Source: Adineta vaga | Taxonomy: Eukaryota > Animalia > Rotifera | DNA length: 64,000 bases | Direction of reading: 5' to 3' | Assembly: GCA_021613535.1 (NCBI GenBank) | Contig: CP075492.1 | Span: 13,268,001-13,332,000 of the forward strand | Shown here: piece by piece, positions 1,861 through 50,638 of the stretch | How positions within the stretch are numbered: position 1 is the stretch's first letter | Layout of the letters: every line of letters begins with the position of its first letter | Notes under the pieces: model-generated | What the model saw: the letters and a program-made list of their open reading frames with translations, nothing else | Told to the model about the DNA's origin: nothing | Database searches by the model: none | Program-made: the position numbers and the translations under genes

Positions 1861-3736
1861 ATGTTGTTAAGAGCAATTTTGTCTTTACTTTTTGATTTAT
1901 ATGTTCAATCTTGGTCTTACTGTTGATCTCTTACCCTAGGAAAAGTATCTTGATTTAAGAAGCATAGAAAAACCTTTAGATCTAGTTGTTAATCAATCAT
2001 CACTTGCACATCAACATTTTCTCATTGGTTATCTATGTTTACGTTCGTTCCAGTACGAGTTTGTACAAGAAACTTTAGCAATGGCTCTCGAAACAGACAA
2101 TACACTTGTTGAAACTCACGTTGGAAGATTATTGACGTTTGTATCTATAATTGAAAGCTACCTATGATTGATATAATCTGCATTTTAGACATAAACAAGC
2201 ATTATGGCAGTATGTCAATCTGCTTATGATAACATCACAGAAGGCGAAGATGCTTTTCTTGAATCAATGCTCAATCTGACACAAACATTCCCATCAGATA
2301 TCGATGCTCAAACTCAACTTGGTCTCGCTTAACTCATCAAAGCGAAACGTCAAACTGTTGAATTAAAAATATTAGAATCATCTTATATGTCACAAGTAAG
2401 AAAAATCTTACGAGCTGCTTTAGTTCAAGAATCATTACATCCTGGTTGTTTAAATTATTTGATTCATGCTTTTGATATTCCACGAGTTGATATAGTTCTT
2501 CAAGTCACTTCTTTTGCTCACAAATACAGACAAGAAGTAGCTCGTACTGTTTCATATGCACAATATATGTCATCACATATATGGATTTGCAAAGGTTAAT
2601 TTCGAAAATACTAGTTGTTACTGTCAAACAATGTTTATATGTTTATGTTTAGGTGAATGGTCATTGGCACATGCAGATAATTCAAGATCCGTGGAAGTCA
2701 GTTTGATCCTTTGTATAATTATACAAATGTTAGTAATAACGAACAAATTTCATCGTTGTCGTTTTCCGAATTAGTTACTCAATTATATGTGAGTCAATCC
2801 AAAGCTCTAATCGTATGTGATGCTGAAAATCGATCTCATTCACAAGAATGACTCATTTATTCGTATTTATAAACAGGTCGATATAAAATGACTATTAATG
2901 TACTAAACGTTCTGAAACTTTCACATAGAATATTACCATCACATGTTGATTATGTAGCACATTTATATAAAGCACACGTTCATATGGTCATACATGGATT
3001 CTTTTGGATTATACATGATAAAAAAAGAAATCAGAAACAATATGTTCAAGCAATCAATGATATACTTGGAGATATCAATGCTAGTCCTATTGAAATATTG
3101 ATAGATAATACAACAAGTGCACCGTACTTAGCACGAACTGAAGCTCTCATTCGATTTGGTAAGTTATATTGTTCTATTTGACTCTATTTCTTCGTCAATC
3201 AATGGTCTAAGTTTAATTTCATACATTTTAAATTGTAGCGGAATATCTTCGCTTGTTAGTGACCGTTGATAATAGTACTATTCATACAATAGCACTCGTA
3301 GGTCATCTGTCACGAATGACTGCAGTGGCATCGCTCATCGAATCGATATCTAAGTCTATATCAACACGGATTTCAATGCTTTACGATGGTGCTTCAATGA
3401 ATTTGCTTTCTATGTTTTAATCATTCATCAACATTTGCTTCATCTTATGCACTCAATAATAGCATCGTTGCTGTCAATGCACTCGGTATGGTTCGAGCTT
3501 ATGTTCAAATGGGACGAACAAATGAAATCAATCAACTATATGAAAAAATTCTCCAAAGCTGGTCAGATTCATCAAATTCACCTTTTATTGGTGGACTTGT
3601 CGTTCAAGAAGCAAGTGATTATCTTCTAGCTATAAAAACAAATCAAATAAAAAACAATACTCCGAACTATAACTCATTCTGTAAACTAGTTTTTGTATTT
3701 TGTTTTCTTACTTACTTACTTTATTACATTCATTGA
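1861..3736 (+). pseudogene. Decayed TPR-like gene of a bacterial-type family, carrying spliceosomal introns
   Basis: Motifs AHQHFLIGYLCLRSFQYE, FPSDIDAQTQLGLA*L, HPGCLNYLIHAFD, AQYMSSHIW, SHSQE*LIYSYL*TGR. In-frame stops at 2330-2332, 2849-2851 and 2870-2872 fall inside conserved-looking motifs; further frameshifts downstream. Confidence 0.7.
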
Positions 3737-4021
3737 TATTTTTGTTTAATTTACTAATAGATTTTATAGTTTTTTGCGACTAGCCCCTTTAAATAAATTA
3801 GTTAGAATATCATTATTTTGAGATCAGTCGTTGTTTTCTACTGACATCGTCTTTGGTGATTACATAACGAAAAAAAAACACTTTTTTTTCTATTCTGTAC
3901 TCTATCAACTCTTGCAAGTTGTATTTTATTTTATTTTATTTTCGTTCTGTAGTAACAACGTGTTTTTTTTGTCTATACCCAAATATATTTCTGACAAAAG
4001 TACCGATTGTCACTTCACCCA

Positions 4022-7000
4022 ATGACTCTCGTCGAAGAAACAGTAAAATCCAAAAAAGTTCAACGATACTTTTTATTACTTATTTCACCGATAACATGGT
4101 TTAAATGTTTGGCATTAATCTTCTATCGTACTCGTGCACGAACGCGCAGAATTGCATTCTTGCAATATCTCGTTCTTCTATGTGTCGTAGTCCTGATGAT
4201 AAGTTCATGCTATCTCTTCTATGCTGTGACAGCAGATTCTGGTGAATACAATCTGTACCTATCCAATGTCGCTTCAAATAAAACATCAATGATTGAAGGA
4301 AGACAACAATTCGATGCTCTTATCTGGCGAAGTGTACTTAAAACACTTTTTCTTGGTGTTATTTTTGGTCTAATTCAAGCATGTAATTTCTATTTAGCCG
4401 CTCAATGGCGTCAACGATTATGTGATCGATATCATGAACTACTATTCAAATCACCTAATGGGTGTGTTCTATATGAAACAGCACAGATAGATGAAGATAT
4501 ACCGAAAGTCATTACAAATGATATTAAACAATTTACTACTAATCTATGTACAGTTCTATTTGGATCGATATTTTTTGCTGGTATGATTTCGGTTGTTGTT
4601 GTCATTATTATTGCCTGTATCTTTCTCGTACTTGCTGCAAATGGAGATGCCAGTGGTATACTAATCTGTTTTAGTGCATTTATTCTTTGTGTATTGTTAA
4701 TATTACCGAGTACACAATTGTACAATTGGAACTTGATTAAACAAGTTCGTACTTTAATTGTGAATTTCGTAAAATAATCTTTATATTTAGTCGAAATTAC
4801 AAGGCTATTTACGTGGATATATACAACGTATTCAAACAAATGCTGAATGTATTGTATTGTATGGTAGTCAACGTGTCGAACTACAATATATTCTAAGATT
4901 GATATCAAATATTCGAAATTCTATGTTCATTGGTTCAATTAGTTTTGCCTTAGTTAATTTTCCCATTCAATTACTTTGTAAATAAAAAAAAAGCAACTCT
5001 CTTTTCGATTTCTGTGATAAAATTTTATTCGATGTTTTTCTTCTAGCTTCTCTCAATGGTATGTGCACGTATATTATGCCAACTGTCGTTTTCTTCTTTA
5101 TTCGAAGTACACAAACACCTGAATTAGCACAAGCATATTTAAGTAAGAGAAGGTATTCAAATGTGAGAAAGAACATTAAAATTTTATTTTCTAGCGGCAA
5201 TTCCATTGTATTCTTTCTTAATTACAGTACTTGGGCAATTACTGTTAATCATGGAACCAGCTTTGATCACAGTAACTATGGGTGATCATTTATGGACATT
5301 ATTAGATCGTTTGGAAAATCTAACCGAAGAACATCAGAAACGTATTGAATATGAACAAACTCATAATATTAGACAAGACGATGTAAATAGATTCACTCTG
5401 GAACATTTGAATATATCTGTGTCAAGTAAGAAACTACAGAGTAATATCAATTTCGATGCAAACCGCGGTCAATGTGTTCTTATCTCTGGGCCGAGTGGAT
5501 GTGGAAAAACATCATTATTTCGTATCTGCGCCGGACTTCGACCTATCGATGCTGAACGAATTTTATTACCAGAGCGTCGAAATCTTCTCTTTATTCCTCA
5601 AAGACCATACTTACCTCTTGGTAATCTCCGATTTCAAGCACTTTTCCTCTTAGAACAACCACACAATATCAATGATGAAGATATCTATCAATTATTTCAA
5701 GTAGTCAATCTTCAATGTCTACTCGAAAGATATACATTAGAAACTGTAAGTTCTTAAAAGATTTCATTTAAGAATTCTTTTTCTTTCTTAAGATTGTTGA
5801 CTGGTCTAAAATATTATCTGTGGGTGAACAACAACGTTTATCATTTGTTCGTTTATTTGCCTATGTTACTCTATCATCGAATCACGATCAATTAGTTCGA
5901 GAAATTCTAGTTCTTTTTGATGAATCAACTAGTGCCGTCGATGCCAAAACAGAACATGAAATCTATGCACATTTAATTCGATTACAAGTATGGTTTGTAA
6001 CTATATCGCATCGATCATCACTTATTCATCTACATCCAAAATCGTTACATTTATACACGAACAAAACTCTACAACAGCAAACTACAACCATATTGTCCCT
6101 TGAAAATAACGAAGACGTTCACACAAATGAGCTGCCTGAGACGAAAGAATATCAAGTAATGATTGTTCAGGTTGATTTCCATAAAAAGATCCATTATTGC
6201 GTTTTTTAACCTAGATCAAAAATGATTCAGCAAATAATAGAGAGACGACATCAGATACAACCATGAAGAGCAATTTCAAATGGCAACATATAGTTGATAT
6301 ATTTAAATTCATTCATCTACCCTTTCATTCAATTGATAAAAATCTTAAATTACAAGTATGTTATTAGTGTAAATTAAAAATTATACATATACATTCTCTC
6401 TTTTATGCTGATAGACAATCATTGCATGGATTGTCACACTTGTAATACTTGGTGCTAGTACTTGGTGTACATATCGTTTTACTAAACAGACAGCATCTCT
6501 ATACAATGTTCTATCCGATTATAGTAGCAATTTAGTTTCTTTGGATAATGCAAAACAAAAGATAAAATCAGACATTACTAGTTAATTATACTTATGCTAG
6601 CTACACCTGCTCTGTTTTCTTTAACTGTCGGTGGTGGTCAAATAATAGCAACTCTGTACAGTCGTCGACAAATGCTTTATTTAACACACTTTTTCTTAGA
6701 TCGATCAGAGAATGAAAAGGAGAATAATCTCGTATATCATAGTAGACACATGACCGTGATACCCAATTTTCTGTCACATGATATTTCAGAGTTTAATAAT
6801 CAACTCTTTTATTTTATCTTTGGTCATATCTATTACACTGGCGTTATTGGTAAGATTGGCATATAGGCGTATATGTAATGAGTATTGTTTTGATAGGTCA
6901 AATCATATTAGCTATCATCTTAGCTGTTCTACTTGCTGAACAAAGTGGTGGTTCTATTGGTGTTATCGTTATTTATGCATTTGTCTTTGGTTTTTTCTTT

Positions 7001-44830: not shown

Positions 44831-45450
44831 ATGGCGAGTACAGGTAATGTTGTAAAAACCACTCATTCAACAAATGATGATTTCTTCTTATGTCGTGCTT
44901 TTGCAAAAGCAATTTCGTCTGATAAACTTCGTCAACTTATCGATCAACAACCAACACCGTCCATTGAACTAAAGTAAAACAAATAAGTTTCATTCTATAT
45001 CGAAATTTATTTTGTAGTGTACCATCAATTGAGCCAATTGAAATGACAAATGATTCTCCATTACCAACTGAAAATATTCAATGGAAACTCGGTGATTTAT
45101 GTTTATGTCCGTATAGTGAAGATGGTCTTTTGTATAAAGCAACAATTATAACAATTGAGTCTTCATCCTGTACGGTTTCTTTTGATGATTATGGAAATGA
45201 AGAAATTCATGCATTAACTGATATTCAAGTACGAACAGATGATGAACAACCGGAAATATTATCACCCATGGAACAACAAGATACAACAACAGACATTCCA
45301 CTGGCAACACCACTACCACCACCACCTCCTCCTCCTCTATTTCCAGTTTTAAGTTCTAATGAAGACAATGATACTTTATCGGCTACATTAATGTCATGGT
45401 ATCTAGCCGGTTATCATACAGGGTTTTATCAGGGGATGAAATCTACATAA
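44831..45450 (+). CDS. SMN: Survival motor neuron protein (Gemin2-binding helix, Tudor, poly-Pro, YG box)
   Basis: DDFFLCRAFAKAI; WKLGDLCLCPYSEDGLLYKATI...FDDYGNEE; poly-Pro; LMSWYLAGYHTGFYQG. Confidence 0.88.
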
Positions 45451-46006
45451 TTTTGTTTTTCTTTTGAATAAATGATTTTTCGTGTACTGGTATAGTTAAA
45501 CCAGAGAAAAAAGATATGTTTTCAACAACATTTCGATTACGATATGATTCAAATATCTCTTTTTTAGTAAAAGACTTTTGGATATATGTCATCATAAGTA
45601 CATCAAATAATCATGTACATCATTTTACCTTTTGCGTATATTTCTTTCTTTTTCAAAAATAAATAAATAACTATATTGCATTCATCATCATCGAAAGAAA
45701 ATATACAATCGGAATTAGACAAATAAAATTTGAATAATAAGCAATACTATTCGTTACAATGACAACGTATATTTAGTGAAAACATCATCAATGATGAGTA
45801 TCGATGATTACGGTTATACTTTTTAACCGGGCGTATATAATAATGACGAATGTATTTTGATCATTCTCCCTACATATCGAATAAAACAAAAGAGATGAGA
45901 TACAATAGTAAAATATTACCACATAGTACACGTGAATATTTCAAAACGAGTTTTATTTCGTACTAATAATCATTTGATTTATTCAAAAATTGACGTGAAT
46001 TTAAGT

Positions 46007-48055
46007 ATGACATGCAACAAAGTAAGTGATGATATTGAAGAAGAAGTCAAAGATAAACATGGTGATTATAAAGTTAACGCACCAAATCCAGTGAATAGTG
46101 ATCCTCAATTTATGGGTGATTATCCTGAACCGAAACCAACCACATCAAAGATTCCCGACTTACCTCCATCGACTGAAGCACCGACGGAATCACCTGCCCT
46201 CAACCGGCCTCCTAAACCTCCTGGACCTGCGTTAGGTCCTTATTTTAATTTTATTACGACAGATTTAGACAAAATGTTATGGATGGGTAGTGCATTGATC
46301 TTTCGACAAATATCTTTTGATCGACCACATATTGAATTTATCTGTGATGTAAATGTTGACTATGATTGGGAAATTTTATATGAAAATCTTTTCGATATGT
46401 GTGCTTATCGTATAAATATGTCCATTGAATTACGTTCTGGTGAAGGTAACGAACGTATCAATTGGAAGGTTGATTGGGGTGATAAACAAACAAATGGTTC
46501 ATTTCATGTCGCTCGTCTTGATGGAAAATGGCGTGGAGGATTTTTTTCATGTAATGGATTTGATGCCACTGTATCGGAACAAACCGCATCAAATTTAACG
46601 TACTCAGATGTTTGGGATCATTTACTTTCTATTCATGACGAAGATCCATTAAATCTATTAATATGGGGTGGAGATCAGAATTATATTGATTTTATATTTG
46701 AAGATGTTCCATATCTTCGTGCATGGACTAATATGGAATGGAATGAAAAATGGACAACTGATTTTCGAGATGATGTCAAAGAACAAGTTGAACAATATCA
46801 TTTTTATACTTATGCAGAAAATTGGCAACGTCGATCAGAAGTCAGACGAGCTTTAACATCAATTCCTAGTATTATGATGTGGGATGATCATGATATTTTC
46901 GATGGTGCTGGATCTTATCCACCGTTATTACATGATAGTCCAGTCATGATGGGAATGTTTTTAGCAGCACAAAAGATGCGATTATTATTTCAACATCATA
47001 CAACATTTGATAAAGCTCGACAGCATCAATTATTTGGACATCAAGGACATAATTTTTTTGCACGTTGTGGTCGTAATCTAGCAATTCTTGGAGTTGATGG
47101 ACGAACAGAGCGAAATACAGAAATAATTCATCACGAAGAAACTTGGAACTTGATTTTTAATAAACTTGAAAACAATCTCGATGGTATTGAACATTTAATT
47201 GTCATCTTTCCTGTTCCATTTTCGTTTATACGTGTTCGTATTGCTGAAACAATTTTTGAACATATGAAAAATCTTCCAAATAAATGGAGAAAATTATCAC
47301 CGATAAAACGGACAAATTCAATTTTTGGTTTACCTGAATTGTATGACGATCTTCTTGATGAATGGGTTCATGAGAATCATATTGAAGAACGAAATAATAC
47401 TCTTCGTCGTTTTCAACAATTAGCAGAGGAGAAAAGAGTTCGAATAACTTATCTCAGTGGTGATGTTCATTGTTGTGGTGTTAGTCGATTTCAAACGAGA
47501 GGATCTCTTCGATCACCACCTATTAATGATGCTAAATTGATGTATCAAATCATTTCATCAGCGATCGTTAATATACCACCATCAAAAACGGCTATTCGTG
47601 TTGCACATCTATTTAAAACAAAATGGAATCCAGTTCCGGATACGATTGAAGAAATACTTGATTTTTTTGAACGACGAGCTGAAGATGGTAAAAAGGCATT
47701 CCATAAAAAGTTTCGTCCAAATCGAAATTGGTGTCTTTTGGAAGAATGTTCAAATGTAGCATCAACAACAATGACTGTTATGAAGAAAAAACGACTTCGT
47801 GTCTTACATCACAAAGACCAACTGATCGCACCAGCTGAATTAGGTCCAACTTCGAATAAAAAAGGTGAAGGTGATCAAGAACCTCCCATTCATTCTCATT
47901 CTCAAAAAGGATCATGTCGTGAAAGAATTCAAGTAGATCAACAATATATCGGAACTTATGATTTAAAAATTCGATTTTGGTTAGAAAGCACACAAAAACA
48001 TGAGGAAGGAAGACAGTTTGTTAGTTATGATTTATTGATTCCAGATCTAAAATAA
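46007..48055 (+). CDS. PhoD-like metallophosphatase (fungal/protist PhoD_2 type), intronless
   Basis: FFSCNGF, WGGDQNYID, WDDHDIFDGAGSYP, DGRTER, YDDLLDEW, LSGDVH, QIISSAIVN. First ATG at 46007. Confidence 0.8.
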   Translation: MTCNKVSDDIEEEVKDKHGDYKVNAPNPVNSDPQFMGDYPEPKPTTSKIPDLPPSTEAPTESPALNRPPKPPGPALGPYFNFITTDLDKMLWMGSALIFRQISFDRPHIEFICDVNVDYDWEILYENLFDMCAYRINMSIELRSGEGNERINWKVDWGDKQTNGSFHVARLDGKWRGGFFSCNGFDATVSEQTASNLTYSDVWDHLLSIHDEDPLNLLIWGGDQNYIDFIFEDVPYLRAWTNMEWNEKWTTDFRDDVKEQVEQYHFYTYAENWQRRSEVRRALTSIPSIMMWDDHDIFDGAGSYPPLLHDSPVMMGMFLAAQKMRLLFQHHTTFDKARQHQLFGHQGHNFFARCGRNLAILGVDGRTERNTEIIHHEETWNLIFNKLENNLDGIEHLIVIFPVPFSFIRVRIAETIFEHMKNLPNKWRKLSPIKRTNSIFGLPELYDDLLDEWVHENHIEERNNTLRRFQQLAEEKRVRITYLSGDVHCCGVSRFQTRGSLRSPPINDAKLMYQIISSAIVNIPPSKTAIRVAHLFKTKWNPVPDTIEEILDFFERRAEDGKKAFHKKFRPNRNWCLLEECSNVASTTMTVMKKKRLRVLHHKDQLIAPAELGPTSNKKGEGDQEPPIHSHSQKGSCRERIQVDQQYIGTYDLKIRFWLESTQKHEEGRQFVSYDLLIPDLK

Positions 48056-48234
48056 ATTTTTTATGCAAAAATCTTCTAACAATTCAAACTTTTATATAGA
48101 TTTGCTATACTTTTTTTTCGTGTTTAGTGATAACTAGCGAACCCTTTATTCAACTCATTGTATGTCTGTTACAAGATCCATATTATATCAGTGATTATAA
48201 ATCGAATGAATAATATCATTGAAAGAAAAACAAA

Positions 48235-49423
48235 ATGCCTCGAAATATTGAAATCAAAGCACGCATCGATGGTGATCTGAATGATCTAATTAACCGAATT
48301 CAACCATTGGCTGATGGTCCTCCACGTCACCTTACTCAAAGTGACACATTCTTTAATTGTCCAACTGGTGGTAGACTTAAATTACGAATTGAACAAGTAG
48401 AATTTTAGTTGAAAAGTCATCGTTAAAACGTTTCTCGCTTTCCATAGGATTCTCCTGCTCAGTTAATTTACTATGAGCGAAATGATGTTGCATCATTATC
48501 AGTTCCTAAACTTTCCAACTATTCGATTGCACCTATTTCTCATCCGAGTGAATTAAAGGTGAGCTAATTAAGTTCTATTTTAGATAATGACTCGTTCAAC
48601 ATGTTTTCAATGGGGATTTTATGATCCTCAAATGTCCGGCTCAATTGATGGAACTGATTTAGTTCCACATGATCGAGCAATAACTCGTGCTTACCAATCA
48701 AAATATCAACCTCCACATCAATCTTCATCATCTATCTTCGTTGGACATATTCCACCAACATGTACTGAAGATGATTTAACTCAAATATTTCCTTCAGCAA
48801 CTCGAATTGAGCTTATTCGTGATATTGTAACACGAGAATCAAAAGGTTACGCATTTCTTGATGGAAAAATTGACCGAAAAAAACAATATAAATTCAATGG
48901 CCATTTATTATTAATTGAAGATGTTGCTTCCAAAAAACTTGTTGGTTGGAAACCAAGACGATGTGGAGGTGGTTTAGGAGGAAAAAAAGAATCGGGACAA
49001 TTAAGGTTTGGAGGAAGTCAAAGACCATTCAAACAACCATATCATCTTAATGAAGAAGTTAAACAACGATGGAAATATTTAGAAAAACAACGAGATCGTA
49101 ATAAATAAGATCTCTGTATGATTCTTTTTCTATTCGTTTAGAATGTTTTAACAATGGCATTGGGTGGAATTCGTGGACAAATTGATAAAGATCGAACATT
49201 ACTTTTAACCGGTCATGGACAAACACGAATACATCTTGATCAAGTGAAAGGTTTAGAATCAACGATTTTCATTGAACTTGAAGTTGTCTTACGAGATGAT
49301 CAAACAGTTGAAGAAGGACAAATTATTGCCAAAGATTTATGTCAGAAAATTGGAATTGAAGAGAAAAATCATATCAAATGTGCTTATATTGATCTATTAT
49401 TAGAAGAACAAAATAAACAATAA
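48235..49423 (+). CDS. CYTH-domain protein (class IV adenylate cyclase-like); exons 48235-48396, 48448-48558, 49142-49423
   Basis: MPRNIEIKAR (ExK), QSDTFF, GRLKLR, LIYYER, KDRTL, TRIHLDQVKGL, FIELEVVL, AYIDLL. Phase-0 join gives ELK|NVLTMALG. Confidence 0.9.
48587..49108 (+). CDS. SNRNP35: U11/U12 snRNP 35 kDa protein, nested in CYTH intron 2
   Basis: YDPQMSGSIDGTDLVPHDRAI, RRM-like IFVGHI and RDIVTRESKGYAFL, GWKPRRCGGGLGGKKESGQLRFGG.QRPFKQP. Confidence 0.9.
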   Translation: MTRSTCFQWGFYDPQMSGSIDGTDLVPHDRAITRAYQSKYQPPHQSSSSIFVGHIPPTCTEDDLTQIFPSATRIELIRDIVTRESKGYAFLDGKIDRKKQYKFNGHLLLIEDVASKKLVGWKPRRCGGGLGGKKESGQLRFGGSQRPFKQPYHLNEEVKQRWKYLEKQRDRNK

Positions 49424-49607
49424 CAGATACGCTCTAACTATTTCTATTGTATTCAAATAAAAGTATTTTTTATCACTAAAAAAAAGATCAATACATCTGC
49501 GTGGTGTAACTTTACTAGATGAACGATTTGGTCATGTAAATCGATAAAATGAACTGATTGTATAAACGACTAGGTGTAATATTTATTCGATTCAAGAATT
49601 AAAACAA

Positions 49608-50638
49608 TTAAACCGATTTATTTCTTTCTGCCCATATACGATTTACATACTTATCAATTTGTTTCGTCGTCGGTAATCTACCCATGGTAGTTAATATATT
49701 CACAAAATATTCAATTTTAATCTCTTGTTTTTCTAATGTCTGTTCTGTATGAAGTTTTTCTTCTTCTAAAATAACTTTTGCTTCTTGAATTTTTCTAATT
49801 AGTAAGCGATTTTTCAATGTTATCGAATGTGCAACAGCATGAATTGCTCGAACAATTTTCCATAAACGTAAAATAACAATTGCAGCCGCTGCACGTCCAG
49901 CTCTACCGATATTTCCATAATGAAAATATAATTCCATAATAAAAGATGCACATACAATTAGACCATCAAGTAAATACAATGGATTTTTAAAGTATTTCCA
50001 ACCAAATGCATAGAACGATATGAAAACTTCGAGAACAAATAAACTTAATAATAAAACAGAAAAATAGAACAGAAATAGATCAGCACGAACTAAACTCGGC
50101 GAATGTTCAAGTAAACATGAATCACGTTGTTCAGTTGTGTTGTACTGTTCCATTTCGTCATCAGTTAAACATGGTGAAGATAATTGTGCTAAGAAAAAAA
50201 GTATAGAAGATAAAGAAAACTATTCATCATTTATCACTTACCGAGAACTAAATCGATGAGAACAATAATAAGATCTGTAACAACTAATAAAATAATGATA
50301 TAATGAAATGGTGGCTGTTGAAGATGATGTAGTAAACGTCGACGAAATAATCGTAAAGGATTCCATGAAGTTGTTGCCGTTAATTGTTCATCTTTAGAAG
50401 CGACTTCTTGTTCAATAATAGCAATTGATTTAAGTTCATTGATAATATTATCTAATTTTATTTCTCCTTGTGATGTTCGAGGTAAAATACGACGATTGAT
50501 TGCTTTCAATTTAGCCCATTTACTTGCTTTTATAGATGTAATTTCATTTTCATCCGTGCTAAGTACATCTTCGACATGTACCGATGGATTAACAAGTGAT
50601 GTTGGAGTAATGTAAATATCCGGTTCGTCAAGTATCAT
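49608..50638 (-). CDS. HVCN1: Voltage-gated proton channel (Hv1-like voltage-sensor-only protein)
   Basis: S1 LLVVTDLIIVLIDLVL, S2 LSLFVLEV, S3 LLDGLIV, S4 ILRLWKIVRAIH, C-terminal coiled coil, no pore domain. One intron at about 50190-50241. Confidence 0.8.

What the first reader, a model, noticed from the sequence alone, without database searches (positions are those of the whole stretch)
48235..49423. SNRNP35 nested on the same strand inside an intron of a CYTH enzyme gene
Seen: CYTH intron 2 (48559-49141, 583 nt versus about 50 nt typical) is almost entirely filled by the complete SNRNP35 ORF. An acceptor (ttttag, 48583) sits 3 nt before its ATG and only 25 nt after the host donor. AATAAA (49100-49105) immediately precedes its stop, about 35 nt before the host acceptor. 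Splicing 48558 to 48584 would give an in-frame CYTH(N)-SNRNP35 fusion. Inference: one pre-mRNA yields mutually exclusive products, either CYTH by cis-splicing or SNRNP35 by SL trans-splicing or a micro-intron plus intronic polyadenylation. This could be a splicing-sensitive switch controlling a spliceosomal protein. Same-strand nesting this tight is rare.
Basis: partly seen in the sequence, partly recalled or inferred. Interest (0 to 1): 0.85.

Follow-up and report, generated by a model that had tools for sequence, protein, structure and literature searches.

The report
SNRNP35 gene filling a CYTH intron
In bdelloid rotifers, the gene for a minor-spliceosome protein (SNRNP35) sits on the same strand inside, and almost fills, an intron of a CYTH enzyme gene. 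Both genes are expressed, the layout is old and conserved, and one species has pulled the two genes apart again, which makes it a tidy example of two genes sharing one transcription unit.

Summary
A three-exon CYTH gene (48235-49423, +) has a 583-nt second intron holding a complete intronless SNRNP35 ORF (48587-49108).

Shown:
- Transcriptome-like contigs from three or four studies carry both CYTH junctions, 48396>48448 and 48558>49142.
- The SNRNP35 body is covered at exon-like depth, while the 51-nt intron 1 is absent.
- Contigs run unspliced from exon 2 into SNRNP35, and from SNRNP35 into exon 3.
- The nesting recurs in all 22 fetched loci from other bdelloids that carry both genes, including Adineta steineri and Rotaria. 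All four coding segments have dN/dS of 0.06-0.45.
- An AG lies 0-4 nt before the SNRNP35 ATG in every locus.
- The stop-to-acceptor gap can be as short as 16-20 nt with no AATAAA.
- Adineta ricciae is un-nested (SNRNP35, then whole CYTH). Each of its genes carries a copy of a 16-mer that is unique in this genome and conserved upstream of CYTH exon 1.

Inferred: one promoter and one pre-mRNA. Cis-splicing gives CYTH. Spliced-leader trans-splicing at the internal AG gives SNRNP35, with CYTH exon 3 as its 3' UTR.

Not supported: intronic polyadenylation, the micro-intron fusion, and a regulated switch. No SL-joined read was seen. The scan has noted the same layout twice elsewhere in this genome (MAK16/COA1, RNASEH2B).

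The parts
48129..48144 (+). Conserved upstream element GATAACTAGCGAACCC, about 90 nt before the CYTH ATG. It is a candidate shared promoter or regulatory element.
   Evidence: It is unique in the 100.8-Mb genome. It is an island of conservation upstream of exon 1 in all 11 aligned bdelloid sequences (A1). In A. ricciae it occurs twice, upstream of SNRNP35 and upstream of CYTH.
48235..48396 (+). CYTH exon 1 (54 codons).
   Evidence: Pfam CYTH profile 2-58. The 48396>48448 joint is in all four runs. dN/dS is 0.10-0.27.
48397..48447 (+). CYTH intron 1 (51 nt, GT..AG).
   Evidence: It is skipped in contigs of X1, X2, X5 and X6. It is absent in the L007 lineage.
48448..48558 (+). CYTH exon 2 (37 codons, ends in phase 0).
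   Evidence: RNA contigs join it to exon 1 and to exon 3. It is conserved at 78-92% in relatives.
48559..49141 (+). CYTH intron 2 (583 nt, U2-type GTGAGC..TTTAG). It is almost entirely filled by SNRNP35.
   Evidence: The joint skipping 583 nt is in X1, X2 and X6. The loose end AATGTTTTA at 48558 is in X1, X2 and X5. There is no U12 donor or branch motif.
48559..48586 (+). Donor, short pyrimidine run, AG (48582-48583), then ATA. This is the candidate spliced-leader trans-splice acceptor of SNRNP35.
   Evidence: A YAG lies 0-4 nt before the ATG and 21-38 nt after the donor in every nested locus. It is also kept in un-nested A. ricciae. No SL-joined contig was seen.
48587..49108 (+). SNRNP35 (U11/U12-35K) ORF, 173 aa, intronless.
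   Evidence: RRM_1 match. Named SNRNP35 relatives at 40-49% identity and bdelloid orthologues at 63-88%. RNA contigs cover 48529-49005, 48976-49091 and 49062-49150. dN/dS is 0.11-0.34.
49100..49105 (+). AATAAA abutting the SNRNP35 stop codon. It is probably not the main poly(A) signal.
   Evidence: It is not conserved: L010, L017, L018, L025, L029 and L030 have none at or just after the stop. Contigs read through into exon 3.
49142..49423 (+). CYTH exon 3 (93 codons plus stop). By inference it also serves as the 3' UTR of the SNRNP35 mRNA.
   Evidence: Pfam CYTH profile 112-179. Contigs 49062-49150 (X1, X2) and 48980-49169 (X6) cross the acceptor unspliced.
49412..49461 (+). Candidate shared poly(A) signals: AATAAA at 49412-49417 and at 49456-49461.
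   Evidence: Positions. RNA contigs end at 49390-49454, and there is no coverage from 49546 to 49679. The poly(A) site itself was not mapped.

Best explanation
This is a conserved two-gene transcription unit of bdelloid rotifers.

- A promoter region upstream of CYTH exon 1, marked by a locus-specific conserved 16-mer, drives one pre-mRNA that runs through CYTH exons 1-2, the SNRNP35 ORF and CYTH exon 3.
- Each pre-mRNA molecule can give only one product.
- If the exon 2 donor is cis-spliced to the exon 3 acceptor, SNRNP35 is removed in the lariat and CYTH mRNA results. This step is shown.
- If the AG that ends 3 nt before the SNRNP35 ATG receives the 22-nt spliced leader, exons 1-2 are discarded as an outron. 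The mRNA is then SL-SNRNP35-exon 3, ending at the CYTH poly(A) site, with exon 3 as 3' UTR. This step is inferred.
- The AG lies only 21-38 nt after the donor, too close for cis-splicing, so it can only be used in trans.
- Both genes are functional. SNRNP35 serves a minor spliceosome that this genome still has.
- The either/or outcome is structural. Nothing shows that it is regulated.
For: RNA evidence:
- Both CYTH junctions are present in RNA contigs of several studies.
- The SNRNP35 body is covered at exon-like depth while intron 1 is absent, so the coverage is neither DNA contamination nor bulk pre-mRNA.
- The 48529-49005 contig starts 30 nt inside exon 2 and crosses the donor unspliced, which shows co-transcription.
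- Contigs 49062-49150 and 48980-49169 cross the acceptor unspliced at depths like the ORF body.
- In X2, exon 1-2 depth (13.4) is close to spliced-junction depth (13.6). Exon 3 depth (25.5) is close to spliced (13.6) plus unspliced (12.4). This is suggestive only.

Comparative evidence:
- The nesting is present in every other two-gene locus fetched (A. steineri, Rotaria sp. Silwood1, metagenome and Logan contigs), in 22 loci in all.
- Purifying selection acts on all four coding segments.
- The YAG before the ATG is conserved in all loci, and in A. ricciae where no CYTH exon lies upstream.
- Stop-to-acceptor gaps of 16-33 nt are usual, and some lack AATAAA.
- The 16-mer is unique in the genome, conserved upstream of exon 1, and duplicated before each gene in un-nested A. 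ricciae.

Context:
- There are 59 SL exon copies followed by GT.
- More than 50% of bdelloid mRNAs carry a 23-nt SL (PMC1925144).
- U11 and U12 snRNA genes are present.
Against: - No contig shows the SL joined at 48584 and no loose end lies there. Contigs drop short tips and rare forms, so this is no proof of absence, but the key step is unshown.
- Depth figures of contigs are means and cannot rank parts of genes reliably.
- Poly(A) ends were not mapped, so a fraction ending at 49110-49140 cannot be excluded.
- The 16-mer lies inside some RNA contigs (X2 starts at 48111). It may be an RNA-level or 5'-UTR element rather than a promoter.
- One X1 contig runs from the upstream PhoD_2 gene into CYTH, so the transcription unit may begin further upstream.
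Confidence: 0.6

Rival explanations
1. SNRNP35 is an independent nested gene. It has its own promoter, overlapping CYTH exon 2 or the first 25 nt of the intron, and its own 3' end. It merely resides in the intron, as most nested genes of flies and mammals do.
For: - It is a complete intronless ORF, and AATAAA lies at the stop in this genome.
- No SL-joined contig was seen.
- SNRNP35 is stand-alone and intronless in outgroups.
Against: - Only 21-38 nt separate the host donor from the ATG, so a promoter would have to sit in conserved coding sequence.
- An RNA contig is continuous from exon 2 into the ORF.
- When un-nested in A. ricciae, the gene carries a copy of the element that otherwise lies upstream of CYTH exon 1.
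- In several lineages there is no room or signal for a poly(A) site.
- There is read-through into exon 3.
Confidence: 0.15
2. SNRNP35 is made from an intron-2-retaining CYTH mRNA (exon 1, exon 2, SNRNP35, exon 3). It is translated by reinitiation or leaky scanning after the truncated CYTH reading frame, which stops at 48565-48567.
For: - Contigs cross both intron borders unspliced.
- The upstream frame stops 2 codons into the intron, 19 nt before the ATG.
Against: - Reinitiation after a 93-codon ORF is inefficient (general knowledge).
- The spacing and frame between the upstream stop and the ATG are not conserved.
- In X2, exon 1-2 depth equals spliced-junction depth, leaving little room for an abundant retained form (suggestive).
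- The conserved AG before the ATG would be unexplained. It persists in A. ricciae without upstream exons.
Confidence: 0.1
3. This is a regulated cis/trans-splicing switch. The cell tunes SNRNP35 output, and so minor-spliceosome capacity, against CYTH by shifting the choice between the two splicing reactions.
For: - The architecture makes the two products mutually exclusive per transcript (inference).
- It has been conserved for a long time.
Against: - Intron 2 is U2-type, so SNRNP35 cannot feed back on it directly.
- A. ricciae lives with the genes separated.
- D. carnosus has the long intron without SNRNP35.
- Other unrelated housekeeping pairs show the same layout in this genome, which suggests a general by-product of SL trans-splicing and genome compaction.
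Confidence: 0.1
4. A CYTH(N)-SNRNP35 fusion protein is made by splicing out a 25-nt micro-intron (48559-48583). The 257-aa A. steineri gene model implies this.
For: - The join would be in frame in this genome.
- A public annotation has such a model (P0004).
Against: - No 48558>48584 joint appears in four runs.
- The frame is broken in L013, L015 and L018, where 4 nt lie between the AG and the ATG.
- At 21-38 nt it is far below the roughly 50-nt introns seen here.
- Half a CYTH barrel fused to an RRM protein has no precedent among the relatives found.
Confidence: 0.02

Closest known systems
Cholinergic gene locus (C. elegans unc-17/VAChT inside the first intron of cha-1/ChAT) and the unc-60 locus
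   Same: A gene lies on the same strand inside an intron of another gene. Both are made from one promoter by alternative, mutually exclusive pre-mRNA processing (PMC3875643).
   Different: - There, the two genes share a non-coding (or one-codon) 5' exon by cis-splicing, and each has its own 3' end.
- Here, the upstream host exons encode half the CYTH domain and must be discarded.
- Here, the nested gene's 5' end is probably made by SL trans-splicing.
- Here, the nested gene fills the intron to within 16-38 nt of each splice site and appears to share the host's last exon as 3' UTR.
- The two products are functionally unrelated.
SL-resolved operons / polycistronic pre-mRNAs (nematodes, tunicates, and others)
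   Same: The downstream ORF is preceded by an acceptor a few nt before its ATG. The genome has SL RNA genes, and the ORF is co-transcribed with an upstream gene.
   Different: - In operons the upstream gene is completed and polyadenylated before the downstream trans-splice site, so both mRNAs can come from one transcript.
- Here the 'upstream' gene continues after the 'downstream' one, so each transcript yields only one mRNA.
- Operons in bdelloids are not documented in the papers I could search.
Ordinary host/nested gene pairs (Drosophila, mammals)
   Same: A protein-coding gene lies wholly inside an intron of another gene. The nested gene is short and intronless (PMC3814207 and PMC5174743, listed; abstracts only).
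   Different: Those nested genes usually sit in long introns with their own promoters and terminators. Here there is no room for either.
Other same-strand nestings noted by this scan in the same genome (MAK16 in a COA1-like intron; RNASEH2B)
   Same: A same-strand housekeeping gene sits in a host intron with an acceptor just before its ATG. A follow-up note states SL trans-splicing for MAK16 (AI notes, not checked by me).
   Different: The gene pairs differ. I could not compare their anatomy or conservation.

Membership tests
SNRNP35 (U11/U12-35K) | A single RRM flanked by the conserved N-terminal YDP..GSIDGTD..PHDR block and the C-terminal GW.PRR.GGG.GGKKESGQLRFGG block. | tested here: met
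   RRM_1 scores 28.7 bits, above the cut-off, though only the first 44 of 70 profile positions match because the RRM is shortened. Both blocks are visible in the ORF. The N-terminal block recurs in every bdelloid orthologue printed and in both outgroups.
SNRNP35 (U11/U12-35K) | The closest named relatives are SNRNP35 rather than U1-70K or other RRM proteins. | tested here: met
   557 hits. Wherever a functional name is given among the 120 listed, it is U11/U12 35 kDa protein/SNRNP35 (one is called only 'RNA binding protein'). Identity is 40-49% over 81-98% of the query.
SNRNP35 (U11/U12-35K) | The organism has a minor spliceosome (U11 and U12 snRNAs). | tested here: met
   U12 scores 78.1 bits and U11 scores 81.7 bits, both over Rfam cut-offs, in G000. 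Bdelloids keep a few minor introns (PMC10639083).
SNRNP35 (U11/U12-35K) | The protein is part of the U11/U12 di-snRNP and contacts the U12-type 5' splice site. | not testable with these tools
   This needs biochemistry.
CYTH domain (PF01928; CyaB-like / triphosphate tunnel metalloenzyme) | A full-length CYTH domain across the spliced product. | tested here: met
   - Exon 1 matches profile 2-58 (18.4 bits, below the cut-off alone).
- Exon 3 matches profile 112-179 (26.4 bits, above the cut-off).
- The unspliced L007 exon 1+2 reads open for 92 codons.
- Full-length relatives P0134, P0126 and P0130 score 55-76 bits over profile 2-179.
- The exons were searched apart.
CYTH domain (PF01928; CyaB-like / triphosphate tunnel metalloenzyme) | The N-terminal ExExK metal/triphosphate motif, and enzymatic activity. 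| tested here: inconclusive
   The N-terminus reads NIEIK, that is N.E.K instead of E.E.K, and this is conserved in relatives. The substrate is unknown. The nearest solved structures are archaeal hypothetical proteins and class IV adenylyl cyclases at E 2e-5 to 2e-3.
SL trans-spliced downstream gene of a polycistronic unit | SL RNA genes are present in the genome. | tested here: met
   59 copies of GCTTATTACAACTTACCAAGAG (up to 2 mismatches), against 0 for the reversed control. A GT donor follows in the copy inspected (L020).
SL trans-spliced downstream gene of a polycistronic unit | A 3' splice site lies just upstream of the ORF with no usable cis donor. | tested here: met
   A Py-rich run plus YAG lies 0-4 nt before the ATG in all loci. 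The only upstream donor is 21-38 nt away. The site is kept in A. ricciae.
SL trans-spliced downstream gene of a polycistronic unit | RNA molecules with the SL joined to the acceptor. | tested here: inconclusive
   No such contig or loose end appears in four runs. Only contigs were available, not raw reads, and these lose short tips.
SL trans-spliced downstream gene of a polycistronic unit | Co-transcription with the upstream gene. | tested here: met
   The contig 48529-49005 crosses the exon 2/intron border in X1 and X2. The shared upstream element is duplicated in A. ricciae.
U12-type intron (would allow direct autoregulation by SNRNP35) | A donor of the form /RTATCCTT and a TCCTTRAY branch site. 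| tested here: not met
   The donor is GTGAGCTA and no branch motif occurs in the intron. Relatives have GTGAGT or GTAAGT.

The most novel reading that the evidence does not exclude
Bdelloid rotifers may have a so-far undescribed class of 'interleaved' two-gene units.

- A housekeeping gene fills an intron between coding exons of another gene.
- It borrows the host's promoter and the host's last exon as its 3' UTR.
- It is freed by spliced-leader trans-splicing at an acceptor placed too close to the host donor to be used in cis.
- Every transcript is therefore a forced choice between two unrelated proteins.

The SNRNP35/CYTH pair would be an old, well-conserved example. It would come with a natural reversal in A. 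ricciae, where duplication of the unit and complementary loss left each gene with its own copy of the promoter element.
Probability: 0.3. Interest if true: 0.7.

Novelty: new variant of a known kind. Interest (0 to 1): 0.55.

Why it matters
**Compaction under SL trans-splicing.** The locus shows how far gene packing can go in an animal with SL trans-splicing. The host intron consists of a donor, about 20 nt, a whole gene, about 20-30 nt and an acceptor. Even so, both genes have stayed under purifying selection at least since Adineta and Rotaria diverged.

**A testable cis/trans-splicing system.** The donor-acceptor distance of 21-38 nt appears to be the design feature that keeps the internal acceptor for the spliced leader. 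That makes the competition between cis- and trans-splicing directly testable.

**A natural experiment.** In A. ricciae the genes are separated and each kept a copy of the upstream element. This is unusually direct comparative evidence for a shared promoter.

**Annotation.** Public gene models at this locus are wrong in some genomes. One example is the 257-aa 'fusion' plus an 87-aa CYTH fragment in A. steineri.

It does not by itself show regulation of the minor spliceosome.

Tried and rejected
1. **CYTH as a disrupted pseudogene: rejected.** Both junctions are in RNA, dN/dS is 0.06-0.45, and no locus has a stop.
2. **Intronic poly(A) at 49110-49140: not supported.**
3. **Micro-intron fusion: not supported.**
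4. **Search for SL-joined RNA: nothing found.**
   - All fetched relatives (L008-L018, L025-L031) proved to be genomic DNA. Intron 1 is retained where it exists.
   - None holds the SL.
   - The one reads call gave contigs only.
5. **Recent horizontal transfer of CYTH: not supported.** The family has members in a mollusc, a tunicate, a fish and bacteria.
6. **A decayed SNRNP35 relic in the long, empty intron 2 of Didymodactylos carnosus: not significant.**
   - A few colinear peptide bits appeared.
   - The DNA local alignment is no better than shuffles.
   - The profile search did no better: 9 of 300 shuffles reached the observed score.
7. **Remnants of exons 1-2 or exon 3 around the A. ricciae SNRNP35, or of a shared 3' UTR: none above shuffles**.
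8. **SNRNP35 trees to polarise the A. ricciae state: poorly resolved.**
   - The protein tree and the codon DNA tree both had low support. GC-rich lineages distort the DNA tree.
   - I rely on taxonomy instead. Rotaria and two Adineta species are nested, so the A. ricciae state is derived.
9. **Rfam scan of 47900-49700:** nothing near any gathering score.
10. **The bacterial promoter/terminator scan** is not informative for a eukaryote.

**Procedural notes.** The CYTH exons were searched one by one by reference. The joined spliced protein was not built, searched or folded.
Full report
**What is there**

The window is G000:C3:13268001-13332000 of a 100.8-Mb genome in six contigs. It is 30.5% G+C with introns of about 50 nt. 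The closest relatives of its proteins are from Adineta and Rotaria, so it is a bdelloid rotifer of the genus Adineta. The species is my inference.

On the + strand lies a three-exon CYTH gene:
- exon 1, 48235-48396
- intron 1, 48397-48447 (51 nt)
- exon 2, 48448-48558
- intron 2, 48559-49141 (583 nt)
- exon 3, 49142-49423

Pfam CYTH matches exon 1 (profile 2-58) and exon 3 (profile 112-179). I searched the exons one by one by reference. I did not build, search or fold the joined protein.

Intron 2 contains the ORF 48587-49108 (173 aa). It has an RRM and the sequence blocks typical of U11/U12-35K. Wherever the relatives listed carry a functional name, it is SNRNP35 (one is called only 'RNA binding protein'), at 40-49% identity across animals.

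- TTTTAG ends at 48583.
- ATA follows, then the ATG at 48587.
- AATAAA is at 49100-49105.
- A join of 48558 to 48584 would be in frame.

Both genes are single-copy in this genome. U11 and U12 snRNA genes are present, so SNRNP35 has a job here. Bdelloids are reported to retain a few minor introns (PMC10639083).

**RNA evidence (contigs of four public runs, three studies; the only reads call allowed)**

The runs behave as cDNA. Intron 1 is skipped in all four (joint 48396>48448), and an intron of the neighbouring gene is skipped in X6. Coverage stops after 49454.

- The CYTH junction across the nested gene is present. A joint skipping 583 nt (GT..AG) is in X1, X2 and X6. A 9-nt loose end at 48558 that reads as the start of exon 3 is in X1, X2 and X5. 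The refutation condition 'no 48558-49142 junction' therefore fails.
- The SNRNP35 body is covered by contigs (48529-49005, 48976-49091, 49062-49150) at depths equal to or above the CYTH exons. The 51-nt intron 1 is not assembled at all. The SNRNP35 RNA is thus neither DNA contamination nor bulk pre-mRNA.
- The 48529-49005 contig begins 30 nt inside exon 2 and crosses the donor unspliced. Transcription is therefore continuous from CYTH into SNRNP35.
- Contigs 49062-49150 (X1, X2) and 48980-49169 (X6, depth 35) cross the exon 3 acceptor unspliced.
- In X2, exon 1-2 depth (13.4) equals spliced-junction depth (13.6). Exon 3 depth (25.5) is about the sum of the spliced (13.6) and unspliced (12.4) forms. 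This fits SNRNP35 mRNAs that lack exons 1-2 but include exon 3. Contig depths are means, so I treat this as suggestive only.
- No joint 48558>48584, no SL loose end at 48584 and no end at 49110-49140 was seen. Contigs lose short tips and rare forms, so these absences are weak evidence.

**Conservation**

I fetched relatives through the SNRNP35 protein and mapped the four coding pieces on each locus by tblastn.

The order exon 1, exon 2, SNRNP35, exon 3 on one strand is found in 22 fetched loci. Several of these are duplicate assemblies or near-identical contigs of one lineage:
- A. steineri (L005, L006)
- Rotaria sp. Silwood1 (L017)
- two large ENA contigs (L007, L018)
- nine metagenome contigs (L008-L016)
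- five Logan contigs (L025-L029)
- two further contigs (L030, L031)

Rotaria and Adineta belong to different families (general knowledge). The nesting therefore predates their split.

All four pieces are open everywhere. Against the window they show dN/dS of 0.06-0.45, so both genes are under purifying selection.

Two outgroups have a stand-alone intronless SNRNP35 with no CYTH nearby. These are an acanthocephalan (L033) and an unidentified contig with 49% identity (L032).

In Didymodactylos carnosus the CYTH gene has an 898-nt intron at the same position but no SNRNP35 ORF in it. Hints of a decayed copy were not significant.

**Conserved anatomy of the intron**

In every nested locus the host donor (GTGAGT or GTAAGT) is followed by a short T-rich run and a YAG. 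The YAG lies 0-4 nt before the SNRNP35 ATG, usually as TAG-ATA-ATG. The donor-to-ATG distance is only 21-38 nt.
- That is shorter than any intron seen here, so the AG cannot serve the adjacent donor in cis.
- The frame a micro-intron would give is not conserved (4 nt in L013, L015 and L018). This argues against the fusion.

At the other end, the SNRNP35 stop is 16-33 nt from the exon 3 acceptor in most loci.
- L025 and L028 have 16 nt and L029 has 20 nt, with no AATAAA.
- An intronic poly(A) site cannot be the conserved mechanism. In the tightest loci the branch point of the host intron must lie at or inside the end of the SNRNP35 ORF (inference).
- Together with the read-through contigs, this makes exon 3 the likely 3' UTR of SNRNP35 mRNA.
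- Candidate poly(A) signals are at 49412-49417 and 49456-49461.

**The A. ricciae exception and the shared upstream element**

In A. ricciae (L003, L004) the genes are in tandem:
- SNRNP35 is at 3001-3522.
- A complete CYTH follows, with exons at 3785-3946, 3998-4108 and 4172-4450.
- Its intron 2 is an ordinary 63 nt at the same position.

The SNRNP35 ATG there is still preceded by TTTCAG plus 3 nt, although no CYTH exon or donor lies upstream. The AG therefore belongs to SNRNP35 expression, not to the host intron.

About 90 nt upstream of the CYTH ATG in the window lies GATAACTAGCGAACCC (48129-48144).
- This 16-mer occurs once in the whole genome, even allowing one mismatch.
- It is the only conserved island in otherwise unalignable upstream DNA of all 11 aligned sequences, including Rotaria (A1).
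- In A. ricciae it occurs twice, about 115 nt before the SNRNP35 ATG and about 100 nt before the CYTH ATG.

The simplest reading has three parts:
- In the nested state one upstream element serves both genes.
- A. ricciae arose by duplication of the unit followed by complementary losses.
- Each gene had to keep a copy of the element.

I found no further remnants of that history, so the route is inferred.

**Spliced leader**

Bdelloids trans-splice a 23-nt leader onto more than half of their mRNAs (PMC1925144, citing Pouchkina-Stantcheva and Tunnacliffe 2005). The leader sequence I recalled matched 59 places in this genome, against 0 for the reversed control. It matched with its first base differing, often in head-to-head pairs. 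A GT donor follows the copy I inspected, in L020. The machinery is therefore present. Its use at 48584 is not shown.

**Most likely mechanism**

- One promoter drives one pre-mRNA.
- The exon 2 donor cis-splices to exon 3 and gives CYTH mRNA (shown).
- Alternatively the SL is spliced to the internal AG, discarding exons 1-2. This gives SL-SNRNP35-exon 3 mRNA (inferred).
- The two outcomes exclude each other per molecule.
- I put about 0.6 on the whole model, more than 0.9 on 'real, expressed, conserved nesting' and about 0.7 on the shared 3' end.

Rivals are an own promoter (0.15), intron retention with reinitiation (0.1) and a fusion protein (0.02). A regulated switch (0.1) is not excluded but has no support:
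- Intron 2 is U2-type.
- A. ricciae manages with the genes apart.
- The scan's own notes list two more same-strand nestings in this genome (MAK16 in a COA1-like intron, said by a follow-up to be SL trans-spliced, and RNASEH2B, unchecked AI notes). This points to a general consequence of SL trans-splicing in a compact genome.

**Comparison with known systems**

- The nearest described systems are the C. elegans cholinergic locus (unc-17 inside the first intron of cha-1, with a shared 5' exon) and unc-60 (PMC3875643).
- SL-resolved operons are also close.
- This case differs in four ways. The nested gene lies between coding exons. It fills the intron almost completely. It probably uses the SL instead of a shared 5' exon. 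It shares the host's last exon.
- I found no paper on this locus or on such units in rotifers. The library is limited.
- I class it as a new variant of a known kind.

Noticed in passing
window 45043-45447 (+) and 45932-48055 (+): An SMN (Tudor/YG-box) gene lies upstream on the same strand. SMN directly precedes the CYTH/SNRNP35 unit in A. steineri, L018 and L029, so two snRNP-related genes are old neighbours. Here a PhoD_2-type phosphatase gene sits between them. In A. ricciae a PP-binding gene does.
   Followed up: partly
window 47000-48558: One 2523-nt RNA contig of run X1 runs from the PhoD_2 gene through the 179-nt spacer into CYTH exons 1-2, with intron 1 spliced. This could be read-through or a longer polycistronic unit. 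In X2 and X6 the contigs break in the spacer.
   Followed up: no
window 47304-47734: Several RNA contigs match only parts of the PhoD_2 ORF. They have non-GT..AG 'joints' and long loose ends (tables 5 and 7). They probably come from transcripts of a paralogue laid at 88% likeness.
   Followed up: no
G000 C1, C2, C4, C5, C6 (e.g. C5:9884356-9925969): There are 59 copies of the spliced-leader exon. Many are head-to-head inverted pairs about 154 nt apart and clustered in arrays.
   Followed up: partly
L034:4326-5223 (Didymodactylos carnosus): CYTH intron 2 at the homologous position is 898 nt long but holds no SNRNP35 ORF. No D. carnosus SNRNP35 appeared among the 120 best hits. Loss, relocation or a missed annotation are all possible.
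   Followed up: partly
L007:2649-2924: In this GC-richer bdelloid lineage CYTH exons 1 and 2 are one open 92-codon stretch. Intron 1 is absent while the SNRNP35-bearing intron 2 is kept.
   Followed up: yes
L005/L006 (A. steineri), gene models 3001-3872 and 3921-4184: The public annotation fuses CYTH exons 1-2 to SNRNP35 (257 aa) and calls exon 3 a separate 87-aa gene. This is an annotation artefact of the nesting.
   Followed up: yes
window 49142-49420 versus relatives: Synonymous divergence of exon 3 is lower than that of exons 1-2 in several pairs. Against L017, dS is 0.33 for exon 3 versus 0.45 and 0.85 for exons 1 and 2. Against L013, it is 0.48 versus 0.94 and 0.87. This could reflect an extra constraint as a 3' UTR of SNRNP35, or be noise in about 90 codons.
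   Followed up: no
window 49608-50323 (-): The convergent downstream gene encodes an Ion_trans-domain protein. It is conserved in this position in A. ricciae and A. steineri. Its 53-nt intron (50189-50241) is spliced in run X6.
   Followed up: partly
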